A stretch of DNA of 64,000 nucleotides from Octopus bimaculoides (lineage: Eukaryota): positions 6,016,727-6,080,726 of the forward strand of contig NC_069001.1 in the NCBI RefSeq assembly GCF_001194135.2. The letters run 5' to 3'. The notes under the pieces are model-generated. The model was not told where the DNA came from, ran no database searches, and was given only the letters and a program-made list of their open reading frames with translations. Shown here piece after piece: positions 13,950 to 62,397 of the stretch. Position numbers and translations under genes: made by a program. The first letter of the stretch is position 1, and each line of letters begins with the position of its first letter.

Positions 13950-14148
13950 ATGTCATTTGCAACCATAACTTTGCTATTTTCTTTACTTGTATGTACCATT
14001 CAGTTGAGTAATACTGCAGAAGAGAAACCCTCTTATTGGTACCCACATGACTATCCAAACCCTCGAAAAGAACAGGCAAGATGTGGACGAGAACTGACGA
14101 AACCGTCTTGGCTTTGTGATCCTGATAAGCTTTTAACGGAAAAAGAAG
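13950..14148 (+). CDS. molo-1: MOLO-1-like TPM-domain protein, first coding exon (signal peptide + start of TPM domain)
   Basis: ATG at 13950 with an in-frame TAA upstream at 13923. Translates MSFATITLLFSLLVCTIQLSNTA-EEKPSYWYPHDYPNPRKEQARCGRELTKPSWLCDPDKLLTEKE: hydrophobic signal peptide, then the YPNP...C...SWLCDPD.LL motif I recognise from the MOLO-1 family. Phase-1 donor AAG|GTAAGC at 14149. Symbol denotes family membership, not proven orthology. Confidence 0.88.
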
Positions 14149-15208
14149 GTAAGCATCAGAGATTTTTGTTTGTGATTTTCCCAAGGAAAGAGAGGAAGGA
14201 GTTCTCATGACCTTTGCAAGGCATCCTAGAGATTAGTGACATTAATTCAGCAGGGACCCAACTTGAAATTCTGAGGGTGACGTGTGCAAGAATAATTGTG
14301 CGGTGAGGTAACAGGGTTCCGGAGCGAATGCTCACAATGGAGTGAGCTCCATTGAAGACACTCAAAGCTCAGGTGATGTTATGCAAAGTCATGTGCAGTG
14401 TTTGCAAATTTTAACTGAAAGAGCAGCCCAGTTGACTAATCATGTATTCCTTATAAAGTAGGATAAATATTGACATTGTAGAATACCCATGCAATCAGCG
14501 TTTGAAAGCTTATATTCTGTCCTCTGAAATGATTCTAATTATAGCTCTGGAAATGTCTCCCATATATTAATAACATGGAAATTTTCCAAAGGATTCATTC
14601 CCCGTTCAGAACATATAGTTAAACGAAAGAACAGTGTCTAAATCCGCTTAGCTGAAAACCCATTTAAAAACTGATTATTCCGGTATATAACCCCTTTCAA
14701 ACACTGTCACACAAAAACACCACATCACTCTCGAAGTACATTTGTCTAAAGAAAACCAGAGGTAAGTCTTATGGCATTGTATCGTTTAAAGCGGTCAAAT
14801 AATATTTCAGAGAAATACCAAATCATAACTTACACGACCTACAATGCACAGTAAAACAAACCTAATGTGGACTTCCAGACGCATCATGAAATATTTACTA
14901 TCTCTTTTCGGTGGAAGCAAATACAACACGAGTAATACCCCACGTCACGTGATACACCATCATCTTGTCTTTTGTCCCGACAGCTACAACAAACATCCGC
15001 TAAAGATCTCTAGCTTCAAATTCATGGATGCTAAAGCAAAACCATGACATGAAAGTAGCTACAATCACTAACCTATATATACACACATATTAATTGCTGG
15101 TGTGGAACTGATATTTCGTTATTCAACTGTAACGTACAACCAAACATACTGCTAACACAGGTAGCTCATAGTATTGGCTTATAAAGCTTTTAATATACAT
15201 GGGAATAT

Positions 15209-15390
15209 AAGGCGGCGAGCTGGCCGAGTGAAATGCTTAGCGGTATTTCGTCAAATTCCACCGAGGTCGACTTTGCCTTTCATCCTTTCAGGGTCGATAA
15301 ATTAAGTACCAGTTGCGTACTGGAGTCGATCTAATCACTGCCCACCCCCACCCCAAATGTTTCGAGCCTTGTGCCTGGAGTAGAAAAGAA
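15209..15390 (+). mobile_element. SINE family A (internally deleted)
   Basis: Head, core and tail match the other copies. Confidence 0.85.
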
Positions 15391-15847
15391 TACACTTGGT
15401 AATGTTATATTTCGTTCTTCCTGGATCGAATTTCTCATTACTCTTGACATTTCTACTGTGGTTGTTGTTGTTGTTATAGCTGTTGTTACTCTTCCTGCTA
15501 CTACCGCTATCATTTACATCTAGAGTGAGTGGGGACGTGTGACGGCGAAAGACAATTTCGCGTTCTACATCTCCTCCCACTTCCCTCTCTTGACAAAGAC
15601 GACGCGCCATATTAAATTTTGCAAATTTTGAAAGGAAAATTAATTTTCTTTTCGAGTGATTTTTGCCTCGCAGGGCAAAAAGAAAAAATTAGCACTGTTA
15701 ATCAGACCAATATGATCTAGATTAACTTAGTCACAAATTATAACAATAAAATGTAACAATAACAATCTTTTTAGAGGTAAACAGGGCACACACTTACGGA
15801 GCTCTGAAATACACGTCCATCTCTGGCAACAATAATGATAATAATAA

Positions 15848-15978
15848 TCCTTTCTACTATAGGCACAAGGCCTGAAATTTGGGGGAAGAGGACAGTCGAT
15901 TATATCGACCCCAGTGCGCAACTGGTACTTAATTTATCGACCCCGAAAAGATGAAAGGCAAATTTGAACTCAGAACGT
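15848..15978 (-). mobile_element. SINE family A (core + tail)
   Basis: Reverse complement, closely matching 15209-15390. Confidence 0.85.
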
Positions 15979-16199
15979 TAATAATAATAAATCAGAGCAC
16001 ATACTGCAAAATAGTTTTCTCAGTATTTTAACTATTCTGTCAATTCACCTGATTTTAGACAATCGATAAAATAGTGGATTGTACGAAACCTTGGTCCGGG
16101 CTCGGCAATTCTGATTACTTCTTATATGACAAACGCTTATCTGATTCTACACACCGCAAGTTTTACGAGTGAGTGTAACTAGTCGTTCTAAATCATATA

Positions 16200-16314
16200 C
16201 GTGTGTATGTACGAATGTGTGTATGTAATTGTGTATATGTGTGCGTGCACGTGATGTGGTGCGTATGTATATATTTGTGTGTATGCATCTATGCATATAT
16301 GTTTAATGTATATA

Positions 16315-16362
<48 letters not shown>

Positions 16363-16493
16363 GTATACTCGTAAATACATACACATACATGACTATATTG
16401 TTATACAAATACATATATNNNNNNNNNNNNNNNNNNNNNNNNNNNNNNNNNNNNNNNNNNNNNNNNNNNNNNNNNNNNNNNNNNNNNNNNNNN

Positions 16494-16529
<36 letters not shown>

Positions 16530-17830
16530 ACACATACATACCTGCATACATACATATATGTCTGTGTATATATATATACATGGGCATACACACAGATACA
16601 CACACACGTACGTACACACACACACACACAGATACACACACACACATATAAGCTTTTATGGATATTATATTAGGAAGGATTGCTTTATAGTTGGTGCTAC
16701 TTCATCTGCTGGCTAATATAATTAACAATGCAATGTAGTGGAAGCTATACTCTTGTATAATTTGACCCTGCAGGGATCATTTATCACACATACACTTACG
16801 CATACACAAATTTAAGCAAATACGTACACACACTTACACACACACACACACATACATACATACACACACACTTACACACACTTACACTCACGTATACACA
16901 CATCACATCTGCACGGCTCATTCGTAATCCTGCCGCGTGATTGGCTATAAATAAGATAGTGAATCATTATATCAGGATCCAGAAAGATTGTCTAAGAAAT
17001 CGCCTGCTGCTTACAATGACAATTTCATTTCATTCTTCCAACTTCTTGGTATCAATTTAATTAATTTATCGCGCAAATTCATTACGTGCGTACGTACGTA
17101 CGTACGTACGAAGGGGCCTATGTACATTCATACACGTATACGTATATATACACATACTTACGTACACAAACGTGCATACGTAACATGTGCACATGCTTAC
17201 GTACATACGTGCACACACGTGCATACATATACACATAGATACGTACATATGTTCACATACGTGCATACATACGTTTATATATCTATACATGCATACATAG
17301 ATACATATATACAAAGGTACATGAACATGCACACATACATACATGCATACATACATAAGTACATCCATAGATGTATTTATATATACATGTATGTGTGTGT
17401 GTAAGTGTGCGCGTGTGTATCTGTGTATGAATGTCTGCCTATATACATATAGATGTATATATACGTGTGAGTGTATGTACATATATATACACACACACAC
17501 ATACACACACACACACACATATATGCATGTGTGTAGAGGTATATGCATGCAGCCATACATCCCTACATCACATAGCTGTATATACACACAATCATATATG
17601 ATATATATGTAATATATATATATATGCACATACCCAAACATACATACATACATATACATATATATATATATATATATNNNNNNNNNNATATATATGTATA
17701 TATGTATATGTGTGTGTGTGTGTGTGTGTGTATGCATAGGTGCTCGCATATCGATACACACATACACAAGGACACACAAACACAGATACACACAAACACA
17801 CACACACATATACATGTACGCTAGATACAC
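16200..17830. repeat. Long compound/degenerate (CA)/(TG)/(TA) microsatellite zone, including (GTAC)n at ~17087-17110
   Basis: Direct inspection; interrupted by N gaps and a short unique segment. Confidence 0.9.
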
Positions 17831-18309
17831 GTGTTTGTATACACACATATATCGATGTAATTTGTGGATTCTCCTCCAATCACAGCAATGAGCATTCAGT
17901 TGTTTAATTAATTGAGTTTCGATTCCTGAAACTGACGTATAAGTGGCTGAGTATTTCACAGCAGACACATGTGATTTTAACACAGTTGTGAGGCTGACAG
18001 GGTATGACATGATGTGACACAATGTTGAATCTTTGAATTGCAGGTGCAGAGAGAGTGGGGGAGCAGAAAGAAAGGAAGGAATGAAGGAAGGAAGGAAGAA
18101 TGAAAAAACAAGAAGCAAACAAACAAAAAATCATAGCACTGTTAGTTTATCAAAGCTTACCTCGGCTGAGTTTGAACCCATGGCACATACAGCACACAGT
18201 TGCAGAAGGGATACGCCATGGCATTCGATCTTACGCTCTGACGATTCGGTCCCGTTGGACACAGTTCACATTTATCACACACATAGACACGAGCACACAT
18301 GCAAGCAAA

Positions 18310-18407
<98 letters not shown>

Positions 18408-18497
18408 CACGATGAAAGCAAAACATGTAGCATCTGGTTAGTCACAGAGTGAAGGATATACGAAATCGCATGGAATGATTTTCCTAAAACATCACTA

Positions 18498-18739
18498 CAG
18501 TAATCCCTCACCATATCGCGGATCACCTATCGCGGATCACCTATCGCGGTTTATTATTTAAGCTTACGTCGATTCCTCCGTGATGTTGTTTTGCATTTAT
18601 GATAAAATAAATATATACAAATTCTAAAAATAATTAAAAATATATATATACAGTACAGTACTGTTTCTACTTCGCGGATTTTCACTTATCGCGGGGAACG
18701 TTTTGGAACGTAACACCTGCGATAGTCGAGAGATTACGG
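18498..18739. mobile_element. pogo/Tigger-like MITE (242 bp)
   Basis: Imperfect TIRs CAGTAATCCCTCACCATATCGCG and (reverse complement) CCGTAATCTCTCGACTATCGCAG. TA dinucleotides on both sides (18496-97, 18740-41). Internal CTATCGCGGATCAC repeats. No coding capacity. Confidence 0.75.
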
Positions 18740-18749
18740 TATTATCACT

Positions 18750-18966
18750 AAGGCGAACGTGCTGGCTGAACCGTTAGCACGTTGGACAAAATGCTTAGCG
18801 GTATTTCTACCGACTCATTACGCTCTGAGTTCAAATACTGCCGAGGTCGGTTTTGCCTTTCATCCTTTCAGGGTCGATGAAATAAGTACCAGTTGAAAAC
18901 TGGGATCGATGTAATCAACTTACCCCCTCCTCGAAATTCGCCGTCGTCTGCCAAAATTTAAAACCA
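18750..18966 (+). mobile_element. SINE family A
   Basis: Head, core and tail; starts ~10 bp after the MITE. Confidence 0.8.
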
Positions 18967-19396
18967 ATATTAGGAAGGAATAAATGTCTAGAAAGCAGGA
19001 ACGCTTTATCGTTCGTGAATAAGTCAATGTTGGTCACTATTTCTTGTTAATATCACTTAGACTCACTATGGAGAGTCTGCGTGTGGACGAGAGTGCACTA
19101 AATGCTATCTTCAAGAAGACGCTTTGTTATACTTTTCTTATAAAAATTTTATCAAGTGAACAAAAGCGACAAAGTTTAGGAGGATTGGTTTCAAAGCATC
19201 GTATGGAATTAGAAAATACAAGGAGTGGTCATCAACATATAAATAAGTTGAACAGCAGTAAGACTTTTTTCAATGTTCTCAGAATATAATTATAACAGAG
19301 CTGAGTGCTTTGAAGAAGTCGGATCTCAGAATTGTGAAGAAATGCAGATTAGATAAAAACATTTAAATGCAGCTAAAAAAAAAAAGATAAAGTATA

Positions 19397-19510
19397 GGTG
19401 TGTTGTGTAGCTAAGACTTTAGGATCATGATAATAAGATCGTGGTCTCGATTCTTGACCGAGCGGTGCGTCTTGTCCCTCAGAGGAAGGCACCTCATTTC
19501 TCGCTGCTTC
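19397..19510 (+). mobile_element. Degenerate SINE head (family C-like)
   Basis: GGTGTGTTGTGTAGCTAAG...TCTCGATTCTTGACCGAGCGGTGCGTCTTGTCC. Confidence 0.5.
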
Positions 19511-20589
19511 AGAAATACTCAGTTGAAAATGAATACCATTTTAAATTTGAGAGGGATGGGCGTCCTTTCCAGGAGGTGTTGGGAAAAGTAGGATACTCCG
19601 AGTTTCCCCGATAGCTTCGACTTGATAATACAAAAGCCACAAAAGAAGCTATTCCGAAAAAAGAAAAAAAGAAACAGTCTGTCTTGATTGAAACGCCAGG
19701 GTCATTCGAAGACATTAGCGGGCCACAGTGAGTGAAAGATCCTTTCAACTATCAAAGCATCAATACGTTAGTTAGCAATATATATATTAATGAAAAGTAA
19801 ATGTAAATAATTTAATAATGTATATGTTATCCCTTGAAGAAAATTGTCCAGGTCTCTAATTTGTTTTGGGATAATGCTAAATAGAGCAGGGCCTGTTGAA
19901 GAATAGAAAATTCTGTTGCAGTGAATTAATGTGTTTTCGGTTTGAATTATATAGGAGGTGTATGGCACGAGGTCCTAGCCTTCGATAAATACATATGCAG
20001 TGACAACCTAAAATTTACGTTGTCTGGCGTGGCTATATAGAATTGGGATATAAGATTCAAATTACTTCTCACGATTGTTGTCTTCGTGATTAATTAAAAT
20101 CTGTTGCAAAAACTAACTGTATTCTGTATCTTAATGACGACACGATCGATGATATTAGTATAGTAGCATACGCAATCTGTAGATTGGTTGCAAATTGAAG
20201 GTGAGATAAAGATAGCAGTAAAGTAAAGTGAGTCTTTGTTGTTCATTTGAGTCTGGGAATACAGCCAGGAAATTTAGGGAAGAAGTTTTCCACTAAGTCC
20301 CTTATGTGCCTGTACCTGAAGTGCCGTCAAAACAGTGTGATTCAAGTAATTGTTCCATTGTTATTGCTGTATTTCCAAATAAATTGCCATAACGAGAAAC
20401 AGTAACCGAAAATAAATCGTTTTATTCAGCAAAAACGCTCGACTTCAGTATACGAAGGACAAAGAGTAAACGTCCGTATTAACTGCAAATGGCTGGCAGC
20501 CAGTTTTTAATTAAGATATACCATAATGCATCTGCAATAGAAAAAGCAATTCGTATTGCACGCAAATGCATACACACACACACATAGAC

Positions 20590-20702
20590 ACCGATAGAAT
20601 AACTACTAGGCTTACAAAGAATAAATCCTGCGGTCGATTTGCTCGACTAAAGGTGGTGCTCCAACATGGCCACAGTCAAATGACTGAAACAAGTAAAAGA
20701 GC
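20590..20702 (+). mobile_element. SINE family B tail
   Basis: ACCGATAGAATAA...CGACTAAAGG.GGTGCTCCA.CATGGCC.CAGTCAAATGACTGAAACAAGTAAAAGAG. Confidence 0.8.
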
Positions 20703-21282
20703 AATACACACATCCATACAGACATACAAACAAATATGCATACATACATACATACATACATACATGATTTATTTCTTTGTTTCCTGGTAGAAGATGCAAA
20801 AGTGCACTCCGTACATACTGGATGCTCTACAATGCTTGATGTATGCATGTGGGTATCGAATAATATTTTAAGGCAATGCTTAAAGAATTAAAGCGAACGT
20901 GAGCTTAAGAACAACGAGATCGTGGGTGGGGGTGTGGCTACAAAGAGAATCCTTTGTACGCATTCGAAGACATTCTTGAAGATGTGTTCGTGTATGCGAG
21001 TGCGTGTCAGTGCGTGTGAGGAATATACGATGAGGAGAAAGACTTTAAGACTGCCGATTTAGTCTGAATGACGTCCAATACTTTTGATTAGAGGAAATGG
21101 AATGAAAACTGTGCTGTTCCTTGTGCTACATTTGAGTGTAATATGGTAATAGTGTGTACTTGCGATTCCATGCAGTTTTTTTTTGTTTCTTTCTATTTAT
21201 ATGTATGATACATACATACATACACAGACACACATATACACACACAAACATTTAAATGTATGCAAGTATATACATACATACA

Positions 21283-21318
<36 letters not shown>

Positions 21319-21378
21319 TGTCTATCTATATACATACACACCCACGCATACATATATATAAATGTTTAGATAGATAGG

Positions 21379-21437
<59 letters not shown>

Positions 21438-21814
21438 GGATATATGAGACGTATATGTGTATTGGGTGTAATCATACAAGATGTGCACATCTAGTCAGAC
21501 ACGCGCACAAAAGCAACCACACAGATACATACACTCACACACACCACACACACACACACGCACAAACACAAACGCAAACACACACGCATAAACACACATA
21601 CACAGACATACACTCACACACATGTGTATGTACGTGTACATGTGCGGGCGGGCGTGTGTTGTAAGTTAAAGTAATGGAAAAGAATGTATATATAATTTAT
21701 TAATTAGGTACAAATCCTTAGGCAAGTAGATTTAAGTGCCTTGCCCTGGAACATAAGCCAAATACACTCAACTCTCCTTATGTACTGACGCCTCATGATC
21801 ATGGCGAATTATAC

Positions 21815-21897
<83 letters not shown>

Positions 21898-24588
21898 NNN
21901 NNNNNNNNNNNNNNNNNNNNNNNNNNNNNNNNNNNNNNNNNNNNNNNNNNNNNNNNNNNNNNNNNNNNNNNNNNNNNNNNNNNNNNNNNNNNNNNNNNNN
22001 NNNNNNNNNNNNNNNNNNNNNNNNNNNNNNNNNNNNNNNNNNNNNNNNNNNNNNNNNNNNNNNNNNNNNNNNNNNNNNNNNNNNNNNNNNNNNNNNNNNN
22101 NNNNNNNNNNNNNNNNNNNNNNNNNNNNNNNNNNNNNNNNNNNNNNNNNNNNNNNNNNNNNNNNNNNNNNNNNNNNNNNNNNNNNNNNNNNNNNNNNNNN
22201 NNNNNNNNNNNNNNNNNNNNNNNNNNNNNNNNNNNNNNNNNNNNNNNNNNNNNNNNNNNNNNNNNNNNNNNNNNNNNNNNNNNNNNNNNNNNNNNNNNNN
22301 NNNNNNNNNNNNNNNNNNNNNNNNNNNNNNNNNNNNNNNNNNNNNNNNNNNNNNNNNNNNNNNNNNNNNNNNNNNNNNNNNNNNNNNNNNNNNNNNNNNN
22401 NNNNNNNNNNNNNNNNNNNNNNNNNNNNNNNNNTATATATATATATATATATATATATATGCGTGTGTATGAGTCTGTGTTTGTATTGCCTGTAGTTGTC
22501 TATATATCTATATATACGTGTGCGCGTGTTTGTGTATGCATGCATGTACTTATGCATGTGCTTGTAAGCATGTGTATAAAATTACAATGACCGAGTGTTT
22601 ACGATGTTGTTGTAGCTTCCTGAATTTAGATTACATATTCTAGTCAGAATATTGCAATACCCTTCAACAAGACACTTAACTTTATCTCCATGTTGATACT
22701 TAGATGAAGTTTTGATCCTAAAAATAACCAGCTGAGTTGAAGGCTCCCAAAATGTATTGTTTCTTCAATGGATTACCCTGTGTGCTATTTACTTAATCAC
22801 TTACTTCCATCATTGGGTGAACAACTATTTTTGTTCATGATCACAAATTCTAAGCAGTGACAGAGAGGAAAATAAACCTGATGCCAGTTAAAATAACTTC
22901 GAGTAATATTTGATCCCGTAAAGGTTTTTCACTGTTGTTTGTCATGGAGACGTAATCACATTGAAGACAAAAAGGTGCAAAACCATTGTGATCAATTCAG
23001 TGCGTCTTCTATTGAACTGGTGTATGCATACATTTCGAAGTAGTTACCTTCTCGTCGAATATGTAGCTTGTGTGTTTATTTGACAAAAAAATGATGATCC
23101 CGAAATACTACAATATTTCTTTCAACACACGGTTTCACATCATGAATCTTGCAACACAAGTTCATAACCGGTTTTTTTTATATACATTTCCTAAAATATT
23201 TAATTATAAAAGTATAATAGGATTTTTTAAGCATCAAGTGGCTGTGAGAAAAAGAGAAATCAAAGGAATCTATCTATTGGTAAGGAAACCTGAATAGCAG
23301 CGTCTCCGTGGGGACATTATTAGTTCGCAAGGGGTGGCATATTGTAAGGTGGCAGTATACAGAAATTTGGATGTTTTGAGAGGTTGTACTTTTTCTTACA
23401 GAGAAAATATCATGTACAATAATTATATTTTAAACACGCGTTCAAAAAAAGAAATCTTTTCCGGGATAAAACTACGAAAAGTGCAGTATCATCAACGAGA
23501 AGAAACATGACTGACGATGGATTAAGGCCTAACGTAATTTTGTTATATAAATTCTCACCAGTTTCTTCAATAATTTCTGTGCGGATTTAACATAGGGACG
23601 ATAATTCATGCAAACATGTAAAAACGTGGCACATGTTGGATGTGCTAATATCAGAAAATATCGATAATAAAATCACCGCTCAAAATTAGCTTCCGTTTGG
23701 TTAAAATAATGTCTTTTTATTTTTTATGTTTTTCTTGCAAAACATTCAGTACAAGGGGACATTGATTTAAAAAAAGGGGGGGGGGGGCAAGAACCACTGT
23801 TCTTCACTTGGAACAATCGAATACAATTCCATTATATCCCTAATGATCATGATATGAAAGCAACATGTGTTTCTCACTGCTCCCCCAACAGAATGTTAGC
23901 CATTTCAGTCTCGTCTCTTGGTATCAAACCAATAACTATAACAATGACAGAAAAAAAAAAAGAAAAAAACTCGAAGTCAACTCCTAACTCCAGAATACAA
24001 ACTCTGTGTTTGTGTTGATTCTCTTTTATACATTGCTTGTGTAATTATAGTTCATGATGCCTGACTCTCTCTTGTGTCTCATTTTGATCTGTTATTACAG
24101 GAGTTGACAGGAAATGCTGCTAATCTCTCACAGCTAACACATTTCCTAACAATCATTGAAATCTAATCCTTTGATTACGATTATTTTTTTCTCTCAATAA
24201 TCAAGAACATGATAACAATTAAAAAAATGTTTTACAAACGAAGCTCTTGGAATAAATTTAACCTTGACTAATAAATGTGCATTCGCAACTAATTATCTGA
24301 TACTTCTTGGTCACGCATTTTGTAATGGAGAAATTTGTGATATCTAATATCATTTATTTTATATTATATTGCAAATGGTGAGAACTGGCGTTGTTGGTTA
24401 CATTTTTCCAACGGTAAAGACCAGTCATTGCTTGACTGCAGTTTTGACAGCACGAATGACGAGGGAGAATTTCTTACTCGATTCAGAACAAATATCACAA
24501 GGGGCTTTGTTCCCAAAGAACCGCCTTCCCGGGTTCATTTGCTGATGTGCATTGTTGGAAGATGCGCGCGCGCACGCAAGCACACACG

Positions 24589-24881
24589 TACGGGCTTCTT
24601 TCAGTTTCCGTCTACCAATTCCACTCACAAGGCTTTGTTCAGCCCGAGGTTATAATAGAAAACACTCGCCAAGGATACCGCGCAGTGGTACTGAACCCGG
24701 AACTATGTAGTTGGGAACACGGCGGATTTCTTTCAGTTTCCATTGATCAAATTCACTTACAGGGGACTTTGGTCGGGCCGTGGCTATAGTTGAAGACACT
24801 TGCCCAAAGTGCCACGCAATGGAACTGAACCTAGGAACAAATAGTTGGGAAGCAAGCTTCTTAATCACACAGCCACGCCTA
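24589..24881 (-). mobile_element. Two tandem SINE family B heads
   Basis: Two reverse-complement head copies (~24589-24715 and ~24725-24881). Confidence 0.78.
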
Positions 24882-25233: not shown

Positions 25234-25278
<45 letters not shown>

Positions 25279-26687: not shown

Positions 26688-26729
<42 letters not shown>

Positions 26730-27672: not shown

Positions 27673-27708
<36 letters not shown>

Positions 27709-51332: not shown

Positions 51333-51346
51333 ACAATACAAATAAC

Positions 51347-51825: not shown

Positions 51826-53605
51826 GGATTTGATGCGATTTTGTGAGTTTTTGTTATGAATTCTTCGAGACTGGAGAGAAAAACTTAGTATCAATTTAAG
51901 TTGATGTTAACTTCTAAATACGAGTCAGTGGTATTAATGTCGTATAAATATCAAAACCTGCAAATGGTGTCGGAGTATTTTTAAAATAAATATATTATAT
52001 TTCAGTATTTTCTGTTTGTTTGCTTTTCCCTGTCTATCTTGTAAATAGATAAATAAATAAATAAATAAATAAGTAAATAAATAAATAAGTAAATAAATAA
52101 ATAATCTGTGTCATTGCAGATCATTCTCTCTTCTCCTGTAGCTTTATTACAACACTTTATATGAGTCCATATTTCACTCTCTCACTTTCTCTCTCTGTCC
52201 CTGTTGTGGAATAAGTATGTATATGTCTGTGCGTGAGTATATGAATGATATATACCTATATANNNNNNNNNNNNNNNNNNNNNNNNNNNNNNNNNNNNNN
52301 NNNNNNNNNNNNNNNNNNNNNNNNNNNNNNNNNNNNNNNNNNNNNNNNNNNNNNNNNNNNNNNNNNNNNNNNNNNNNNNNNNNNNNNNNNNNNNNNNNNN
52401 NNNNNNNNNNNNNNNNNNNNNNNNNNNNNNNNNNNNNNNNNNNNNNNNNNNNNNNNNNNNNNNNNNNNNNNNNNNNNNNNNNNNNNNNNNNNNNNNNNNN
52501 NNNNNNNNNNNNNNNNNNNNNNNNNNNNNNNNNNNNNNNNNNNNNNNNNNNNNNNNNNNNNNNNNNNNNNNNNNNNNNNNNNNNNNNNNNNNNNNNNNNN
52601 NNNNNNNNNNNNNNNNNNNNNNNNNNNNNNNNNNNNNNNNNNNNNNNNNNNNNNNNNNNNNNNNNNATATATATATATATAGGCAGACAACCGTAAAGTC
52701 ACAAGACATCTTTGCAAACACACAAACGCATACATAATCACCCAACCCTATATATATATATGTATGTATATGTGTGTGTATAATACATGCAAATATACAT
52801 ACATACATACATACATACATACATACGTACATACACATTGATTACACATATATAAAACACATTATTATACACCGATATAGATATACTGAAAAATAGACAT
52901 GCGCAGACAAGCCTAAAGGATTTGAAATATATATTTTTCTTAAAAAGATGAAACCTAAAAAATACAAACATTATACACATAACTAAAAAGATATGTATAC
53001 ACACAGAGCAATAGGTAAACGTATCGAAACAAATATGTACACACACACTCACACATACACAGAAATACATACATGTTTCAGTAGAAATATTTCGAAGAAA
53101 GTTTAAAGAAAAAAAATGTGATAAATATAATATAATTGAATAAATTCAACCGACAATATGAATGTTCAGACAACAACAACAGCAACATGAAAATAGATAC
53201 ACAAATATCAACAAATTTGAATGAAAGGAAAACAAATCAAAATGAAGAGACAGAAAAATTATGAAAACGGAAACAAGAAATAAATGAAAATATCTATAAT
53301 TTCTGTAAAGCTAAGAGCAGTCTTTGGGAAACAATAAAGTCTTTTGAGATGGAATTATAATTCAATAAGACACCCCCGTCTTCCGAGACGTACATCCATA
53401 CACGCGTACACAAACACACAAGCATGTGTGTCTATGCAAAATACATACACACACACATACATATAAGACACGCAAACACAGACATACACACACATGCACG
53501 TGAGCGCACAGAAACACACACACACACACATACACACACATATATAGCTCTTTGCGTCTCTAGCTTTCCCTGCTTATATTCATACAAAAATACATGCATA
53601 CATAC

Positions 53606-53649
<44 letters not shown>

Positions 53650-53943
53650 ATATATACATACATACATACATGTATACATATATATATAAAAACACACATA
53701 CATATATACTCATATATACTTATATATATATATACATACATACATGCATACATATATATATATACACACATACATATATACACGTATATACTTATATATA
53801 TATATATATATACATACATATATGTGAGTGTATTTGCGTATATGTGTGTGTCTGTGTGTGTGTGTGTGTGTACAAACATATGTGTGGGGGAAGGGGTATG
53901 AAAGGTGTTCGGAGCAGTACCAGTCAAGTTAACTTTGGAAGGT

Positions 53944-53998
<55 letters not shown>

Positions 53999-54597
53999 GA
54001 CGACGACACCGGTGGAGACGGTGTCAGCAGCGACAGCGGCAGCGGTGATGGCGGCGTTGGTGGTGGCGATGGTGGCGATGGTGAAGTTAACGGGGTTCGG
54101 CGGTGGTGGAGGCGGAGATGGTGGTGCCGGTGGTTATGATAGTGATGATGATGATCATAATAATCATGATGTTGACTCTTTCGAGATAAGACCTGATTTA
54201 GCCGACCAGCTGTGAAGGAGCGGCTAATCTAAGAGACGCGACCCTTAACTGTCGATTCACAAGGATGCATATCCTTTCAGAATCAATAAAATAAAGCGGC
54301 AATCCAGGCTGAAGATTTGGTAGAATTGAAAGAACGCCAAAGGAGATCCCTTGCGGAGTTTGTTCCGACCCTTTGAGTTCTAAATTCCGTATAGTAGACT
54401 TATTCCGTGGCCTAGTTTAACACCACCTCCTGGTTTCCGGACGCCATCTGCAGGGTTCATTGTATTGCAAGAACTCTAGCCAAGTCTTTGCTCTCAGGAT
54501 AACCTGTTCCCTTCATTCCAACAGTGACGGAGACCCTGAAAATTATCAAAAAGATCTGACTAGTGCAAAACCTGTCGTTTTAACTTAGAAGAGTAGC

Positions 54598-55035
54598 AAA
54601 GGCAATGAGCTGAGAGAATCGTTAGCACAGCGGACAAAATGCTTAGCGGCATTTCATCCGTCTTCTCATTCTGAGTTCAAATTCCGCCGGGGCCGTCTTT
54701 GCCTTTCATCTATTCAGGGTCGGTAAAATATGTACCAGTCGAATACTGGGGTCAATGTAATCGACTAGTCCCTGCCCCCAAAATTTCAAGCAGAAAGGAT
54801 TATTATTGTTATCATTAAGGCGGCGAGCAGGCAGAATCGTTACCGTGCCGGAAAATATGCATAGCAGCATCTCTTCCGTCTTTACGTTCTAAGTTCAAAA
54901 ACCGCCGGGGTCGACATTGCTATTCATCCTTTCGAGGTCGATGGAATAAGTATCAGTTGAGCACAGTGGTCAATACAAAATCAACTAGCCCCTTCCTCAA
55001 AAACTGCTGGCCTTGTGCCTATAGAAGAAAGGATT
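54598..55035 (+). mobile_element. Two head-to-tail SINE family A copies
   Basis: Copies at 54598-54800 and 54817-55035, separated by a short (ATT)-like tail. Confidence 0.82.
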
Positions 55036-56103
55036 ATAATTTAGAAGAGTAACTGGATGAAGAATAGGAGGAACACCACTTGCGTTGAGTAAAGTTGATG
55101 GGAATTTATCTATTGAGCCACTTCCTGGATATGCATTGGCTCTCATATTCATTGATTTTCTGAGCGCCCAATCGATTACGATAAGCACAGTTCATTCACA
55201 GTAATACGTTCTTACATATTACATACAGCTGTCCTTCTGTTTATGGCCTTTGTATATATATTATATAATGGTTTAAACAGATTATATATCTCCTGCAGAA
55301 TAAAATTTATGACATATATAATTACATTTTTAATTTTAAGAACAAATAATCAAAACTATACCTAGAATTTAGAATGTTTTAAAGCGGGTTCATTATACGT
55401 TAAAAGAACGGATTTAATTTCATATATTTTTGACTTTAGAAGTAAATTGAAATGTTAACAAACATTAGTGTTCGTTTACCTCTTCGCATCATTAAATAAA
55501 ACATATAATTATATCTTACGCTATTAATAAAATATTTAATTATATGCTATTAATCATGTATCGTTTGTCATTGGTTTATAAGTTACGAATAGGCAATTAT
55601 TAAGTTCTGGTTAAAGATAAGAGAACAAAATAAATAGAATACATACGTTAAATTAATGTTGCTGAATGTGTAAGTGTTGAAACGCAACAATTTAACAAAA
55701 CATTCAACTTATAGACGATTCCAGTAATATTATGGTTTTGGTGCGAGGAATACAGAGTGCAAAGTCTGTAATGGGATACGAGAAAGGGTCTAATATTATA
55801 TCGAAACTATACGGAATTGTCTTTCATATTTAAAGAACTGTTCAAAATAATTTTAGCCTTCAAGATAATGCTGTCTTATTAAACTTTTGATGCGTACTCC
55901 ATCAAATATACTGACACATTTTATCAGTAAACTGTCACTTTGACCACATTACCAATTTCAGCTGTTATTAACAGGACATATTGTCTATTTTTAACGACCA
56001 TATATTACAATAACACTGACCTACAACGTACATTAGTTTATTAGCCTATTCGGATTGCATTATGTTATCAATATTATTTTTATTGTTATCATTAGCGGCA
56101 TTA

Positions 56104-56405
56104 CAAGGTGGCGAGCTGGAAAAATCGTTAACGCGTCGGGTTGAAAGCTTAGTGACTGTTATAATCCTTATTATGATGAATTGATATAACGTCCACTTAG
56201 TAAAACCAGTAAAGACAAGACTATCTCTGACCCCCTACTACGTGCTCTGGTACTTCTCGTACTTCTCTTTACTTATAGTGACTAGGTTATTCCATTCGTC
56301 ACGTGGGAGAGGTGTACCATTTTTACTAATTCATTACAACAGTGACATTTCATCCGTCTTCACAATCTGAGCTCAAATTCCGCTGAGGTCGACTTTGCCT
56401 TTCAT
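56104..56405 (+). mobile_element. SINE family A split by the 185-bp insertion
   Basis: Head at 56104-56156 continues seamlessly at 56347 (ATTTCATCCGTCTT...GAGGTCGACTTTGCCTTTCAT). Confidence 0.78.
56157..56341. mobile_element. 185-bp insertion with TG...CA ends and 5-bp TSD (solo LTR or MITE)
   Basis: Interrupts a family-A SINE exactly. GTGAC is duplicated at 56152-56156 and 56342-56346. The termini TGTTATAAT and ATTACAACA are inverted repeats (8/9 match). Confidence 0.68.
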
Positions 56406-57130
56406 ACGGATCATTTCGTATACAGATACGTCTATGTAAACAATGCAATCGGAGATAGTAATATAGGTAATGGGTGTATATGCACATTTCAAGAGTCATT
56501 ACTATTTCATCAGCACCACATCCAAATCATCAACTATCTACGAATGCGTTGCTTAAGCATAAATATGTGTGTGTGTATTACGTATGTGTGTGTGAGTGTC
56601 TGTGTGTATGTATGTATGTATGTATGTATATCAATTTTATTGCAAATTACAGTTTTGTGTTATATGTATAACCGTGTTAGTGAACTATCAGTTCGAATCC
56701 TGGCTGAAATCGTGAATTCTCTTTGAAAAGGTATGCTAGTTACAACTTATAATTTCTGCTACCTCGCATGAAATCCTGTGTTGATGTAAACTTTTAATAG
56801 GAAATTCTTAACTATACAGAAGTATAGAAAGGTTATTTTTCTTTGATGTAAGGTCTGGATTTCTTTAACAATGCGTTTCAATTCCACTGGTCATGCTACC
56901 GTCCATTCCAAACTTTAGGAAAAGGATTTGAAGACAATTGAACTTGATTAACGATTTCCGACTCTCATTATTCTAAACTAACCATGATTGCTGTCTCAGT
57001 TTCAATTTCCTGCTATTAAACACACACACACACGCGTGCATACACGAATATATATATACACACACATAGACACACACATTCGCGGTACTCGTATATACAT
57101 ACATGCTCAATCTCATAGACATGCACACAG

Positions 57131-57169
<39 letters not shown>

Positions 57170-57874
57170 CATACGTTTATATGTGTGTGTGCGTGTGTGT
57201 ACATATATTACACACACATACATGCACACGCATACACATACATGCACACGCATACACATACATACATGCATACATACATACAGACATACATACAGGTACA
57301 TAAATACACACACACCTTTCATTCTATTCTATTACAAAAAGACAAATGCCTCTGCTTCAGTCACACTTTACAATGACACGCGGCCATATTTCGAGTGGCA
57401 ACAGTCAAAGCTATGCGCATGCCTCAATGCACTACATCCGAGTTCTAGTAAATCTCCATATTTTCAACCAAATACTAACCTACCACAAAGAACACGTTTC
57501 ACGCTTTAAATCTCTTCAGAAATAAGCCAAAAGAACTTCTAAGAACTCTACTTTGCATATCTCGAATTTTCCAGCGCTTATTCAAACAATTCAACTACTG
57601 TTCTCTAAATCTGAATATGTTATATATACTCTACCATCTATCTCAGTTATTTTAACAAACGTCAACACAGAATTCAACTCTAGACGAAAATGTATTTGTA
57701 GGCAACTATGGTCTTTCAAATGGTCATTGGTTAATCAAGATATGTTTGATTCGTTTTCTTTTATCTTTCCCCCTCAACATTCTCTGGCTTCAGTTCCACG
57801 ATCAATCTAATCTCAAAACAGTGACCTTTTCTTTTCTTTGTTTTCTTCTCTTTCTTTTCCATTTTCTTTCTTCT

Positions 57875-57912
<38 letters not shown>

Positions 57913-58578
57913 TCAATTCAGTTTTCAAATCCGTCCGTCAAGTGATTTGCTATCAGAAACTATTAAATAACAGATAAGTAAGCAACTACGAACTTCAGTA
58001 AAATAACGCAGCCAGTAAATATATTTCCTATCGTTCGTCTGCTGGTGAATGCCATACACAACTAGGTCGCCATCTCTTTTGCTATATACACTCAGCTCGT
58101 TATGTTATTCTTTGAATTATTGTAACCAAAATTTGATTCCGTATATTTTCATTCACTCTTTTTTCTTTAGCTCTGATTTCTCTTCCTCATATTTCTTCTG
58201 GCATCATTTACGCTTTTATGTTTCCAGGAATATTTTCTTCCATTTTTCTTTAGTATTTTTTCTTCAATTTTTTCTTTTTTTCATATTTAATGTTCTCTTT
58301 TCTTTCTATTTACATTTTTTTTATCTATTTCTTATTCTTCTCATTTCATTCTTTTTTATTATTTCATTATATGAGTTTCTCTTTTTGTTGTAGTTGTTGT
58401 TGTTGAATTTCTTTTCTTTCGTTTTCCTTCTTAAAGTATCGATTTCTGCAGGAACCCCAAACTTTAGAATTAGATTCTGCTTGTATAAATAAATAATTTG
58501 TCAGAACATGGAACTGGCTGCGTAAGAAACCACAGGTTGGTTTCTTACTGAAAATAAATCAATCGCAAAGTACGACGG

Positions 58579-58625
58579 TTGTATTATTGTTGTTGTTGTT
58601 ATTACTATTATTTTTATTGCTATAA

Positions 58626-58712
<87 letters not shown>

Positions 58713-58843
58713 TACTACTACTACTACTACTACTACTTCAACTACAACTACTACGGTTGATGTGTTATTGTTGCTGTTGTTCTTTGTTACCTGCAGCAGC
58801 GGCAGTGACAGCAGCAGCAGCGGTGGTGGTGGTGGTGGTGATG

Positions 58844-58903
<60 letters not shown>

Positions 58904-59185
58904 AGAGATGATGACGATGACGACGACCACGATCACCNNNNNNNNNNNNNNNNNNNNNNNNNNNNNNNNNNNNNNNNNNNNNNNNNNNNNNNNNNNNNNN
59001 NNNNNNNNNNNNNNNNNNNNNNNNNNNNNNNNNNNNNNNNNNNNNNNNNNNNNNNNNNNNNNNNNNNNNNNNNNNNNNNNNNNNNNNNNNNNNNNNNNNN
59101 NNNNNNNNNNNNNNNNNNNNNNNNNNNNNNNNNNNNNNNNNNNNNTTTTACATTCTAAGTTTAATTTAATACTTTGCTTTGGTGT

Positions 59186-59231
<46 letters not shown>

Positions 59232-59550
59232 ATGCGTGTGTGTGTACATGCGTGTGTGTGTGTGTGTGTGTACGCGCGCATTTGAAGAATGTAATCGGAC
59301 GAAAAGAGGCATATAGGTATATCAATTCATACACGTACACACATATCTGCCTCTACGTATATCCTTCTTTATGAGTGTACGTGTGTGTGTTTGTGCATAT
59401 ATATGTGCGTGTGTGTGGGTGTATGTATGTAGATATATATATATGTATGTATATACATATACATATATATATATTATACATATATTATACATATTCACAC
59501 AAAGCGAAATATATGTACGTAAATAGATACATAGATACAGACAGACAGAC

Positions 59551-59619
<69 letters not shown>

Positions 59620-59748
59620 TAAAATTACGATGGTAAATACATGCACACATTTATACACACTTGATATATATATTCATATATTTAAGAATATGTATATGTG
59701 TGTGTGTGTGTGTAAGTATATATAAGCATATCTCTCTAATACATATCG

Positions 59749-59837
<89 letters not shown>

Positions 59838-59900
59838 TGTCTGTATATATTTATCATAGTAATTTCAAATAGATTTGTCAATAGTTTCATGTTTACCATT
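58579..59900. repeat. Compound microsatellite zone (CTA, ATT, GTA, TG, GATA)
   Basis: Direct inspection. Confidence 0.92.
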
Positions 59901-60595
59901 GATTTATCAATACGTTTAGCTTGTTTTTTTCCCCGAGATGCCTCGATAATACATTGCACGCCGCAATTGCTGTTATTCAGTGCTCTGTTATGTGTTTGTA
60001 CCAGCAAACTCTGCTTAAGTCGTAACTCGAAAACCAGCGGAAAAAAACTAGCGTGTATGCGTACATATAACATGATATAATACAATATTATATTCCATAT
60101 TATATATCTATGTGTGTGTGTGTGTATGCATGTGTGTATGTATCTATGACTTCGAATTTACGAAAACTGGGAGGTGGTGAAGTGCTTAATACAGAAGTTT
60201 ATTCGAGTTTTGTACAGTTTATTAATTTGTTGGAAATGAGACTTTTTTTCACCTCGGTTGGTTTGAGTTTTTGTTTGTTTACGTTTATCTCACTGCGACT
60301 GAAATTCAAATCCAAATATCAAGCTTCATCGCATCTCAGAATTTTAGTTCGTTTGCTCTTGGGGTGGGCGGGGTGGGGAAGTGTGATGTAGCGTGATATT
60401 TATAGCATATGTTGCTTGGACAACACGCAGACTTTCTAACCCATGGCAGTANNNNNNNNNNNNNNNNNNNNNNNNNNNNNNNNNNNNNNNNNNNNNNNNN
60501 NNNNNNNNNNNNNNNNNNNNNNNNNNNNNNNNNNNNNNNNNNNNNNNNNNNNNNNNNNNNNNNNNNNNNNNNNNNNNNNNNNNNNNNNNNNNNNN

Positions 60596-60632
<37 letters not shown>

Positions 60633-62261
60633 GCACAAACCCACACACACATATGTATGTTTACAGATATACATACACATATTAACGTATGTTAATATAT
60701 ATGTTAATATGATGATTCTCTGATTGTGTGTTTGTATGTGTGTATGTGTGTGTGTGAGTGTGTGCGTGCGTGCGTGCGAGCGTGTGTGTGTTTGAGTGTG
60801 CTACTATTATGATGCGGCTTGATGAAAGAATGAAATTCATAGTTAATCGGTTCGATAGCTAAATAGAAAAATTATTACATAGTTGTTACCGCTATTATGT
60901 TGCTTGATTTTCCAGCTCGTCAGATGTTTTATCAATACTCAATGAAAGTGCCATAAAACATGTTTGTTTTCGTGTCCCCAGTATCTCGATATTGGTATAA
61001 GTATGTGGTATTTTTCAGCCAATCTTAAAAGACAACATATTCCATAATTCACCATAATATATTTATGTTAACTTCTTTCCTCTCCAATATTGGAACCAGA
61101 ATATTAAGTTTTGTTTATCTCTACAAGTGGGAGGACAAAATGTGGGTTGATGCATTGCACTAAGGTTGAAGACTTTGTTTAAATTTATGTGTGTGGTTAT
61201 AGCTATTAATTATTGTTATGACGGAGGCGATATTTTCGCTGCAGGTGTATCTAACTTTGACGTTATTTTGTTGAAGAATGTACGATATTTTGCAGTTATT
61301 ATCGAAATATTTCCCCAATCACAAATGCTATAAACTCTCAGTAGCTATTTCTACATAGCTGCCAAACCAATTAGCTAGAACTCCCTACTCCCACACGTTA
61401 GAATTATTATCGTTTCCACGGCAATATGTGTTATAAAAGCCACCGAAGTCACTCTGACGTAACTGACCAATATCAATCAAAACAGAATATTAAGAGGCTT
61501 AGAAGCCTGATATTAGGATATGAATCTCACTCGCAGTGAAAAAACTGAGTGCCGACAAAGAGGAGCAGATTGGGGGAAAATTGGCGTTTTATATTTTGTC
61601 ACAATTATTTATAATGCCTCTTTGGTCCAGATATTTAACTAATATAAGGCTCACTCCACCAAACTGTAAAAAGGCACCATAGGATAGTATATCTTATGGA
61701 TGTGAACAACAGGAGCACGTCATTAATTCTAGCTTATTCCGCCCAGCTGTAAGTATGTATCATGAGATAGTTACTCTAGCAGCTTCGTGATACGGTAGAA
61801 TAGTATATCTCACTGCTGTGTGCAACAACATCACAACAGACATAATGAGACAATGAAGTAGCCGTTCTGTCTGGAAATATCAGTCAAAATTTCCCACAAA
61901 TCTCACTTTACTGTCTTAAAAAAAGAAGAACACATAGGACAATGTTGTCCAAAATGCACCGTCGTAATAATAAGACAGGAGGCTCAGGACAGTACACGAA
62001 CCTATGTTTGTGCTCTTATAATGTAAACAATACCGAGATAGTTTTTTTCTTTTCCCCTTGAAATCCTAACATTCATTCCTGGAGATGTTTTATCTGAGTA
62101 GAATAAAATACCAAAAATGGACAAAAATCGGATTCATGAAACGAATGAATACGTAACTAAGGATGACCTTATTTAGACAATGATGGTGACGACTATGTCA
62201 ATTAAGATAATGATGATGAAGATGTCTACTACATTAATCTGTTTCTCTTTTGGTATTTCAG

Positions 62262-62397
62262 CCGCAACAAGAATGATAGCGAAGAACGTTTATTTCAAGA
62301 CAGCAAAAAGTTCGCTACAAAACTGATGCGGCGCTGGGGAGGACGAAGCATGTGTGAGGAATTCGTTATTATTCTATATTCCAAAGCTGATAATGTC
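62262..62397 (+). CDS. molo-1: MOLO-1-like protein, third coding exon (gene continues beyond window)
   Basis: Acceptor TTTCAG|C completes the phase-2 Val codon. Encodes RNKNDSEERLFQDSKKFATKLMRRWGGRSMCEEFVIILYSKADNV, the TPM-type FA..L...W.....C...V.IL.S..D pattern. Donor GTC|GTAAGT at 62398 (phase 0). Absent from the ORF track. Confidence 0.87.

What the first reader, a model, noticed from the sequence alone, without database searches (positions are those of the whole stretch)
13950..62397. Hidden MOLO-1-like TPM-domain gene: candidate auxiliary subunit for cephalopod nicotinic-type receptors
Seen: three small exons with canonical splice sites and matching phases (1, 2, 0) splice into a stop-free 154-aa peptide: MSFATITLLFSLLVCTIQLSNTAEEKPSYWYPHDYPNPRKEQARCGRELTKPSWLCDPDKLLTEKEAMEVDKLIASVRTKTRCPCYKCVNKNKGYLIMVALMGKMYRNVRNKNDSEERLFQDSKKFATKLMRRWGGRSMCEEFVIILYSKADNV. 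It has a signal peptide, six Cys in the mature part and an NDS sequon. The ORF track shows it only as fragments. Established: C. elegans MOLO-1 is a single-pass protein with an extracellular TPM domain that acts as an auxiliary subunit of the levamisole-sensitive AChR. Octopuses have expanded atypical nAChR-like genes, including the sucker chemotactile receptors. Inference: this gene may modulate cephalopod AChRs or chemotactile receptors. I know of no functional description of such a subunit in cephalopods.
Basis: partly seen in the sequence, partly recalled or inferred. Interest (0 to 1): 0.8.

Follow-up and report, generated by a model that had tools for sequence, protein, structure and literature searches.

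The report
Octopus MOLO1/TPM-domain gene, already annotated
The three exons are real and encode the first 154 residues of a 259-residue octopus cell-surface protein of the MOLO1/TPM family, but public databases already list the gene, and its proposed role in tuning acetylcholine-type receptors is an untested guess.

Summary
Exons 13950-14148, 43768-43894 and 62262-62397 (+) have GT/AG borders and phases 1, 2, 0. They splice into exactly the quoted 154 aa, which hits Pfam MOLO1 (PF17175) at E=7e-24.

All 18 assembly gaps in the span lie in introns and several abut microsatellites. A gap-free Argonauta hians locus has the same exons, order and phases. Sepia esculenta RNA-seq contigs carry the orthologous reading frame uninterrupted.

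The gene is not hidden. It is NCBI LOC106871943 of Octopus bimaculoides (259 aa; UniRef "TPM domain-containing protein"). Coding exons 4 and 5 lie about 15 and 17 kb beyond the window.

The AlphaFold model (pLDDT 87) matches only TPM-domain structures. Six family-conserved cysteines and conserved N-glycosylation sequons fit an extracellular protein.

The protein ends in a 13-14-residue hydrophobic stretch with no cytoplasmic tail. That looks like a GPI-anchor signal, not the transmembrane helix plus tail of nematode MOLO-1-type proteins.

Relatives are widespread in molluscs, annelids, nematodes and non-vertebrate deuterostomes, and every named one that was looked up is uncharacterised.

A role as a receptor modulator is plausible only by homology to one worm protein. 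A specific link to chemotactile receptors has no support. This is an ordinary, already catalogued gene carrying a reasonable hypothesis.

The parts
13950..14148 (+). Coding exon 1 (199 nt, aa 1-66 plus the first base of codon 67). It holds the start codon, the signal-like hydrophobic segment (aa 3-19) and the start of the MOLO1/TPM domain with C45 and C56.
   Evidence: The donor is AAG|gtaagc. It is 100% identical to P0001. Pfam MOLO1 starts at aa 30.
14149..43767 (+). Intron 1 (about 29.6 kb as assembled). It contains 13 assembly gaps (about 5.2 kb of N), microsatellites and SINE-like interspersed repeats. No coding domain was detected.
   Evidence: The Argonauta orthologous intron is 17.7 kb and gap-free.
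43768..43894 (+). Coding exon 2 (127 nt, the rest of codon 67 to the first two bases of codon 109). It holds helix 64-80, the conserved C83-x-C85-xx-C88 motif and beta-strand 96-102.
   Evidence: The acceptor tttag|CC is preceded by an (ATT)n tract. The exon length is the same (127 nt) in Argonauta.
43895..62261 (+). Intron 2 (about 18.4 kb as assembled), with 5 assembly gaps (about 0.9 kb of N) and repeats.
62262..62397 (+). Coding exon 3 (136 nt, the last base of codon 109 to aa 154). It holds the N113-D-S sequon, helix 116-135, C140 and beta-strand 143-149. It ends in phase 0 at the donor GTC|gtaagt.
   Evidence: The exon length is the same (136 nt) in Argonauta.
62398..64000 (+). Start of intron 3. 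Coding exons 4 and 5 (aa 155-259) lie beyond the window, at window-equivalent 77696-77832 and 79193-79373. They encode the rest of the TPM domain, the stalk and the C-terminal hydrophobic tail.
   Evidence: L001 equals the window shifted by 3949 with 0 mismatches. Exon 4 is at L001 73747-73883 and exon 5 at 75244-75424.

Best explanation
Shown:
- The window holds the first three of five coding exons of Octopus bimaculoides gene LOC106871943, which spans about 65 kb.
- Its 259-aa product has an N-terminal signal-like hydrophobic segment (aa 3-19).
- It has a MOLO1-type TPM domain (about aa 27-208) with an alpha/beta fold and six family-conserved cysteines.
- It has two N-glycosylation sequons that are kept, in varying sequence, in Argonauta and Sepia.
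- A low-confidence linker (about aa 210-242) is followed by a 13-14-residue hydrophobic C-terminus with no tail.

Inferred, moderately likely (about 0.6): the protein enters the secretory pathway and forms three disulfides. It is then displayed on the outer face of the plasma membrane, most likely through a GPI anchor attached near S232-N-A, rather than as a membrane-spanning protein.

Inferred, weaker (about 0.3): like C. elegans MOLO-1, the only studied animal member of the family, its TPM domain binds the extracellular part of a pentameric ligand-gated channel and raises its open probability. For a lipid-anchored protein this would work through extracellular contacts only. Ordinary nicotinic receptors are more likely partners than chemotactile receptors.
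For: Gene and splicing:
- Exact splice and translation.
- 100% identity to the public 259-aa model. Exons 4 and 5 were found downstream in the same assembly.
- The gap-free Argonauta locus has identical phases and identical exon 2 and 3 lengths.
- The Sepia esculenta larval RNA-seq reading frame is uninterrupted.

Domain:
- Pfam MOLO1 at 83-85 bits against a cut-off of 27.
- 427 relatives at E<=1e-3, with homology spanning aa ~27-208.
- AlphaFold2 model with pLDDT 87.1 and pTM 0.75.
- The 14 best PDB matches are all TPM-domain proteins: PG_0361, BA41/BA42, TLP18.3, Psb32, LMTP1, cg2496 and the mycobacterial supercomplex TPM-domain subunit (AscF/CtaI).
- A family profile also reaches BA41 and other TPM chains by sequence.

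Extracellular location:
- C45, C56 and C140 are invariant, and C83, C85 and C88 are conserved in at least 90% of 50 members. All six align with a Caenorhabditis member.
- The sequon positions are kept across cephalopods.

Anchor:
- The last hydrophobic segment runs to the final residue in octopus, Argonauta, Sepia, Haliotis, Patella and others.
- Of the 40 closest relatives, 23 are of this type, 12 have no anchor and 5 have a transmembrane helix plus tail.
- The linker has low pLDDT.

Function by homology: MOLO-1 is described as a surface protein that associates with the levamisole-sensitive AChR and raises its open probability (PMC9714921; PMC10486475).
Against: - No GPI or signal-peptide predictor was available. 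The anchor call rests on hydropathy and simple rules only.
- The O. vulgaris model (P0162) lacks the hydrophobic tail. That model spans 115 kb and probably has a wrong last exon.
- I saw no octopus RNA-seq junction reads and no tissue expression data.
- Orthology to C. elegans MOLO-1 itself could not be tested, because its sequence could not be retrieved. The only tree is neighbour-joining without bootstrap.
- Identity to a Caenorhabditis member is 26%.
- The family has several paralogues per species with three different C-terminal layouts. Function need not be conserved.
- TPM domains elsewhere do unrelated jobs, such as photosystem II repair, a respiratory supercomplex subunit and acid phosphatase.
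Confidence: 0.5

Rival explanations
1. It is an extracellular (GPI-anchored or shed) TPM-domain protein whose job has nothing to do with ligand-gated channels. It might act as a chaperone or assembly factor for another membrane complex, as a matrix or adhesion component, or as a weak ecto-phosphatase or metal- or nucleotide-binding protein like some other TPM proteins.
For: - TPM domains are functionally diverse, covering TLP18.3/Psb32 in photosystem II repair, Rv2345 as an acid phosphatase and AscF in a respiratory supercomplex. The model matches these structures.
- Pfam TPM_phosphatase gives a sub-threshold hit in octopus (18.3 bits) and an above-threshold hit in the Argonauta orthologue (25.6 bits).
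- The animal family has many paralogues with secreted, GPI-like and transmembrane forms. Only one member has ever been studied.
Against: - The only functional data for the animal, cysteine-rich MOLO1 subfamily point to receptor modulation.
- Identity to the bacterial and plant TPM proteins is only 8-16%.
- AscF lacks metal and nucleotide binding according to the title of PMC13456599, so enzymatic activity is not a general property of the fold.
Confidence: 0.3
2. It is a true single-pass transmembrane orthologue of MOLO-1 that serves as an auxiliary subunit of cephalopod nicotinic-type receptors, possibly the sucker chemotactile receptors.
For: - MOLO1 Pfam hit.
- All six cysteines align with a Caenorhabditis family member.
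- In the unbootstrapped tree, the nematode transmembrane clade is the sister of the clade holding the cephalopod genes.
- A C-terminal hydrophobic segment exists.
Against: - The hydrophobic segment is only 13-14 residues and ends the protein. Nematode-type members have 20-30 hydrophobic residues plus a 16-34-residue charged tail.
- The family is ancient and widespread, and is not tied to the cephalopod receptor expansion.
- CRT1 and CR840 function as homomers in heterologous cells without a partner.
- No expression data link the gene to suckers.
Confidence: 0.15
3. It is an annotation or assembly artefact: exons brought together by mis-scaffolding across gaps, or a pseudogene.
For: There are 18 gaps between the exons, and the window and L001 come from the same assembly.
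Against: - Exon order, phases and lengths are identical in a gap-free Argonauta assembly.
- An orthologous intact mRNA exists in Sepia.
- The reading frame is intact, and the cysteines and fold are conserved.
- Several gaps sit directly next to microsatellites.
Confidence: 0.02

Closest known systems
C. elegans MOLO-1 (Boulin et al. 2012, Nat Neurosci 15:1374, PMID 22922783; not held in the library, described via PMC9714921 and PMC10486475)
   Same: - It belongs to the same Pfam family, PF17175, which is named after MOLO-1.
- It has an N-terminal signal-like segment followed by one extracellular cysteine-rich TPM domain.
- The six cysteines align with a Caenorhabditis family member, at 26% identity and E=8e-21.
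   Different: - MOLO-1 is described as a single-pass transmembrane protein. Nematode members seen here have a long helix plus a charged tail.
- The octopus protein ends in a short hydrophobic stretch with no tail, which is GPI-signal-like.
- Orthology to MOLO-1 itself was not established.
- No functional data exist for the octopus protein.
Public annotation: LOC106871943 [Octopus bimaculoides], with orthologues in O. vulgaris (same LOC name), Argonauta hians (LOC115221659) and Acanthosepion pharaonis
   Same: It is the same gene. There is 100% identity over the 154 aa, and the window matches GCA_001194135.2 CM046621.1 base for base over the overlap.
   Different: Nothing differs. The database entries carry no functional name beyond "uncharacterized" or "TPM domain-containing protein".
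Bacterial, plant and cyanobacterial TPM-domain proteins (PG_0361, BA41/BA42, AtTLP18.3, Psb32, LMTP1, mycobacterial AscF)
   Same: They share the fold. These are the top 14 Foldseek matches, with target-normalised TM-scores of about 0.56-0.78. There are weak profile-to-sequence matches and a sub-threshold Pfam TPM_phosphatase hit over aa 121-199.
   Different: Identity is only 8-16%. They lack the six-cysteine pattern of the animal MOLO1 subfamily. Their locations (thylakoid lumen, bacterial envelope or cytoplasm) and functions are unrelated.
Ly6/uPAR-type GPI-anchored modulators of nicotinic receptors, such as Lynx1 (from my own knowledge, not tested here)
   Same: If the GPI reading is right, the protein would work in a similar way, as a small, disulfide-rich, lipid-anchored extracellular protein acting on the receptor ectodomain.
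   Different: The fold is entirely different (three-finger versus TPM). There is no homology, so this is an analogy only.

Membership tests
Pfam MOLO1 (PF17175), the animal cysteine-rich TPM-domain family | HMM score above the curated gathering threshold | tested here: met
   84.8 bits for the 154-aa peptide and 83.3 bits for the full protein, against a cut-off of 27. The match covers profile positions 1-121 of 122.
Pfam MOLO1 (PF17175), the animal cysteine-rich TPM-domain family | Conserved six-cysteine pattern in the domain | tested here: met
   C45, C56 and C140 are invariant. C83, C85 and C88 are conserved in at least 90% of 50 family members. All six align with a Caenorhabditis member.
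TPM-domain superfamily (TLP18.3 / Psb32 / MOLO-1 fold) | TPM alpha/beta fold | tested here: met
   The AlphaFold2 model has pLDDT 87.1. The top 14 Foldseek PDB matches are all TPM-domain structures, with a best E-value of 9.7e-6.
Pfam TPM_phosphatase (PF04536) | HMM score above the gathering threshold | tested here: not met
   The octopus protein scores 18.3 bits against a cut-off of 22.1, over aa 121-199. The Argonauta orthologue scores 25.6 bits, which is above the cut-off. The relationship is real but distant.
MOLO-1-type auxiliary subunit of a Cys-loop receptor | Single-pass transmembrane helix with a cytoplasmic tail | tested here: not met
   The C-terminal hydrophobic run LFLGIVLILLFSW is 13-14 residues long and is followed by 0-1 residues. 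Nematode-type members have a long helix plus a charged tail. This rests on hydropathy only.
MOLO-1-type auxiliary subunit of a Cys-loop receptor | Orthology to C. elegans MOLO-1 | tested here: inconclusive
   The C. elegans sequence could not be retrieved. A neighbour-joining tree without bootstrap puts a nematode transmembrane clade, which includes a Caenorhabditis member, as sister to the GPI-like/secreted clade holding the cephalopod genes. The bootstrap run was lost.
MOLO-1-type auxiliary subunit of a Cys-loop receptor | Physical association with the receptor and increased gating | not testable with these tools
   This needs co-expression electrophysiology and co-immunoprecipitation.
MOLO-1-type auxiliary subunit of a Cys-loop receptor | Expression in receptor-bearing cells (muscle, neurons, sucker epithelium) | not testable with these tools
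   The only evidence is whole-larva Sepia esculenta RNA-seq contigs. No octopus tissue data were reachable.
GPI-anchored surface proteins | An N-terminal signal peptide, plus a C-terminal hydrophobic tail at the very end, preceded by a polar spacer and a small-residue omega site | tested here: inconclusive
   The N-terminal hydrophobic segment spans aa 1-20 and the tail spans aa 246-259 with nothing after it. A candidate omega triplet S232-N-A lies 11 residues upstream of the tail, and Argonauta has N-S-A at the same place. No dedicated predictor was available.

The most novel reading that the evidence does not exclude
The cephalopod gene may represent a lipid-anchored (GPI) branch of the MOLO1 family, common in molluscs and annelids. 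Such proteins would modulate pentameric ligand-gated channels purely through extracellular TPM-domain contacts. That would be a second, membrane-tethered but non-spanning class of Cys-loop receptor auxiliary proteins, possibly also acting on octopus chemotactile receptors.
Probability: 0.2. Interest if true: 0.6.

Novelty: new member of a known kind. Interest (0 to 1): 0.25.

Why it matters
If the protein does tune octopus nicotinic-type receptors, it would extend the only known TPM-domain receptor auxiliary subunit beyond nematodes. It would also give a handle on receptor diversity in cephalopod neuromuscular and sensory systems.

As things stand, the result mainly shows three things. The first-stage reader can reconstruct a real spliced gene across 48 kb of gap-ridden intron. 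The gene is already catalogued. Its C-terminal architecture differs from that of the worm protein on which the functional idea rests.

Tried and rejected
- Word-indexed protein searches with the peptide, with a 50-sequence alignment and with a Strongyloides member returned only 2, 6 and 4 hits. They never reached C. elegans MOLO-1, so direct comparison with MOLO-1 was not possible.
- Boulin et al. 2012 is not held in the library.
- Direct PDB sequence search with the peptide gave nothing meaningful.
- The O. vulgaris locus could not be fetched because the gene range of 115 kb is too long.
- A bootstrap of the family tree was lost when the script machine died. The tree is therefore unsupported.
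- Rfam (gathering threshold) and tRNA scans of the window found nothing.
- Six other complex-looking ORFs in the window, including the antisense ORF over exon 1, gave no Pfam match.
- The weak Methyltransf_22 hit over aa 21-68 (17 bits, below the cut-off) was dismissed as noise.
- Plasmodium MOLO1-domain proteins, looked at as a precedent for GPI anchoring, were judged not to be GPI-anchored by the authors of PMC9876418. They give no support either way.
- Searches for LOC106871943, LOC115221659 or MOLO1 in cephalopod literature found nothing.

Full report
**1. The observation**

I read the three claimed exons directly, then spliced and translated them.
- The exons are 13950-14148 (199 nt), 43768-43894 (127 nt) and 62262-62397 (136 nt) on the + strand.
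- Every donor is GTAAG. Every acceptor is a pyrimidine-rich tract ending in AG. The cumulative phases are 1, 2, 0.
- The start codon has A at -3 and an in-frame stop eight codons upstream.
- The peptide hits Pfam MOLO1 (PF17175) at 84.8 bits against a cut-off of 27 (E=7.3e-24). The match covers positions 1-121 of the 122-position model.

**2. The gaps**

The scan's program listed six gaps. The span actually contains 18 N runs.
- Thirteen lie in intron 1 (about 5.2 of 29.6 kb) and five in intron 2 (about 0.9 of 18.4 kb).
- None touches an exon or a splice site.
- Several gaps directly abut microsatellites. Examples are (AT)n at 26683-26729, 36696-36846 and 39462-39556, and (ATT)n at 62770-62848. 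This points to unresolved simple repeats rather than mis-joins.

The window cannot prove continuity by itself. The locus I fetched for the public protein (L001, GCA_001194135.2 CM046621.1) is the same assembly, shifted by 3949 bases with zero mismatches. Independent evidence comes from two other species.
- The Argonauta hians orthologue lies in a locus with no N at all. It has the same five coding exons in the same order and orientation, phases 1, 2, 0, 2, 0, and identical lengths for exon 2 (127 nt) and exon 3 (136 nt).
- The cuttlefish orthologue P0003 is carried as an uninterrupted 822-nt reading frame on twelve contigs, all shorter than 2 kb. The six fetched measure 1.7-1.9 kb. Three of those runs are named in papers on Sepia esculenta larval transcriptomes (PMC10442824 and PMC10571815).

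The protein alignment is colinear across all junctions. The one exception is a two-residue indel in the cuttlefish sequences next to the exon 2/3 junction.

**3. The gene is not hidden**

- The peptide is 100% identical to residues 1-154 of P0001, NCBI "uncharacterized protein LOC106871943 [Octopus bimaculoides]". That protein is 259 aa, is named "TPM domain-containing protein" in UniRef, and has PF17175 precomputed.
- Coding exons 4 and 5 lie beyond the window, at window-equivalent 77696-77832 and 79193-79373.
- Orthologues are annotated in Argonauta hians (70% identity over the 154-aa peptide; 61-63% over the full protein), Octopus vulgaris and Acanthosepion pharaonis.

**4. Anatomy of the protein**

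- Residues 3-19 form an N-terminal hydrophobic helix.
- Homology to 427 library representatives (E<=1e-3) spans residues about 27-208.
- An AlphaFold2 model built on 50 relatives has mean pLDDT 87.1 and pTM 0.75.
- Its 14 best PDB matches are all TPM-domain structures: PG_0361, BA41/BA42, TLP18.3, Psb32, LMTP1, cg2496 and the mycobacterial supercomplex TPM-domain subunit (AscF/CtaI).
- A family profile also reaches BA41 and other TPM chains by sequence.
- Pfam TPM_phosphatase is just below threshold in octopus (18.3 bits against 22.1) and above it in Argonauta (25.6 bits).
- The six mature cysteines are invariant or nearly so across the family. They align with a Caenorhabditis member.
- The sequons at N113 and N168 are present at the same positions, in different sequence, in Argonauta and Sepia.

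These features together fit an extracellular, disulfide-bonded, glycosylated domain.

**5. The C-terminus**

- After a low-confidence linker, the protein ends ...KSNAIQNNIRQSMSK-LFLGIVLILLFSWN. That is about 13-14 hydrophobic residues with nothing after them.
- Argonauta, Sepia, Haliotis, Patella, Gigantopelta, Owenia and Solemya relatives end the same way.
- Among the 40 closest representatives, 23 are of this type, 12 have no C-terminal hydrophobic segment and 5 have a helix plus tail. Among the more distant hits, 71 of 111 have a helix plus tail.
- Nematode members (Strongyloides, Caenorhabditis angaria and others) have a long helix followed by a charged tail.
- The octopus layout is that of a GPI-attachment signal. 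A candidate omega site is S232-N-A, with N-S-A at the same place in Argonauta.

This is an inference from hydropathy only, because no predictor was available. The O. vulgaris model lacks the tail, but it spans 115 kb and probably uses a wrong last exon.

**6. The family**

- Named relatives come from gastropods, a chiton, bivalves, an annelid (at least three paralogues), a nemertean, nematodes, a spider, amphioxus and a hemichordate. All of them are labelled uncharacterised, hypothetical or "TPM domain-containing".
- I built a neighbour-joining tree on 175 domain columns.
  - It puts the cephalopod genes inside a large GPI-like/secreted clade of molluscs and annelids.
  - It places a nematode transmembrane clade as sister to that clade, with other transmembrane clades further out.
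  - The bootstrap was lost, so this is only a lead.
- I could not retrieve C. elegans MOLO-1 itself, so orthology is unresolved.
- I could not count paralogues in the octopus genome.

**7. Function**

- MOLO-1 is described as a single-pass surface protein that associates with the levamisole-sensitive AChR and raises its open probability (PMC9714921; PMC10486475; the original paper is not held).
- It is the only studied animal member of the family. The receptor-modulator idea for the octopus protein is therefore reasonable but rests on 26% identity and a different membrane attachment.
- If GPI-anchored, the protein could act only through extracellular contacts. From my own knowledge, this is as Ly6-type proteins such as Lynx1 do on nicotinic receptors.
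- The chemotactile-receptor link has no support.
  - The family long predates the CR expansion.
  - CRT1 and CR840 are reported to work as homomers in heterologous cells (the 26-member family is noted there, and the origin of CRs from nAChRs in PMC11526382).
- No paper links MOLO1 or TPM proteins to cephalopods or molluscs.
- I put about 0.3 on modulation of some pentameric receptor and about 0.05 on chemotactile receptors specifically.
- The main rival is an unrelated extracellular role. This fits the functional diversity of TPM domains and the many paralogues.

**8. The rest of the window**

- There is no Rfam family and no tRNA.
- There is no other ORF with a Pfam match.
- The introns are full of microsatellites and SINE-like interspersed repeats of 130-230 nt, present in 4-12 copies.

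**9. Verdict**

This is a real gene, correctly reconstructed and correctly assigned to the MOLO1/TPM family. It is already in public annotation, ordinary in kind, and probably lipid-anchored rather than membrane-spanning. Its function is untested. Interest is low to moderate.

Noticed in passing
window 13950-62397 (all N runs are listed): The finding's span holds 18 assembly gaps, not the six the scan's program listed. Further ones start at 31505, 33608, 36847, 37875, 39557, 41167, 42336, 44429, 47998, 52263, 58938 and 60452. Another gap (13533-13662) lies 288 nt upstream of the start codon, so the promoter and 5'UTR region is incomplete.
   Followed up: yes
window 26683-26729, 33504-33606, 36696-36846, 39462-39556, 62770-62848 and others: Several gaps directly abut microsatellites, (AT)n, (TATATA)n and (ATT)n. 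This suggests that the gaps are unresolved simple repeats rather than scaffold mis-joins.
   Followed up: partly
window 4598-4820, 7649-7824, 18750-18938, 44984-45203, 54599-54791; also 24596-24851: SINE-like interspersed repeats of about 130-230 nt occur in 4-12 copies within the window. They include a head-to-tail pair with a 134-nt unit. None overlaps an exon. They were not classified.
   Followed up: partly
P0162 (Octopus vulgaris LOC106871943; no DNA fetched): The O. vulgaris orthologue model is 245 aa. It has a different, hydrophilic C-terminus and a gene range of 115 kb. It probably has a mis-modelled last exon, or this could be an alternative isoform without the anchor.
   Followed up: partly
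family-wide (P0001-P0151): MOLO1-family proteins fall into three C-terminal layouts: a helix plus cytoplasmic tail (76), a hydrophobic stretch at the very end that looks like a GPI signal (49), and no anchor (26). The layouts largely follow clades in a neighbour-joining tree. I found no description of this split in the literature.
   Followed up: partly
P0004 (489 aa, MetaClust UPI00078A1C80, species not given): This protein has two nearly identical MOLO1/TPM domains in tandem, separated by a transmembrane helix and a Gly-rich stretch. It is probably a fusion of two tandem paralogues in a gene model.
   Followed up: no
window 13816-14232, minus strand: A 139-codon stop-free frame runs antisense across exon 1. 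It has no Pfam match and is probably a by-product of the coding strand.
   Followed up: yes
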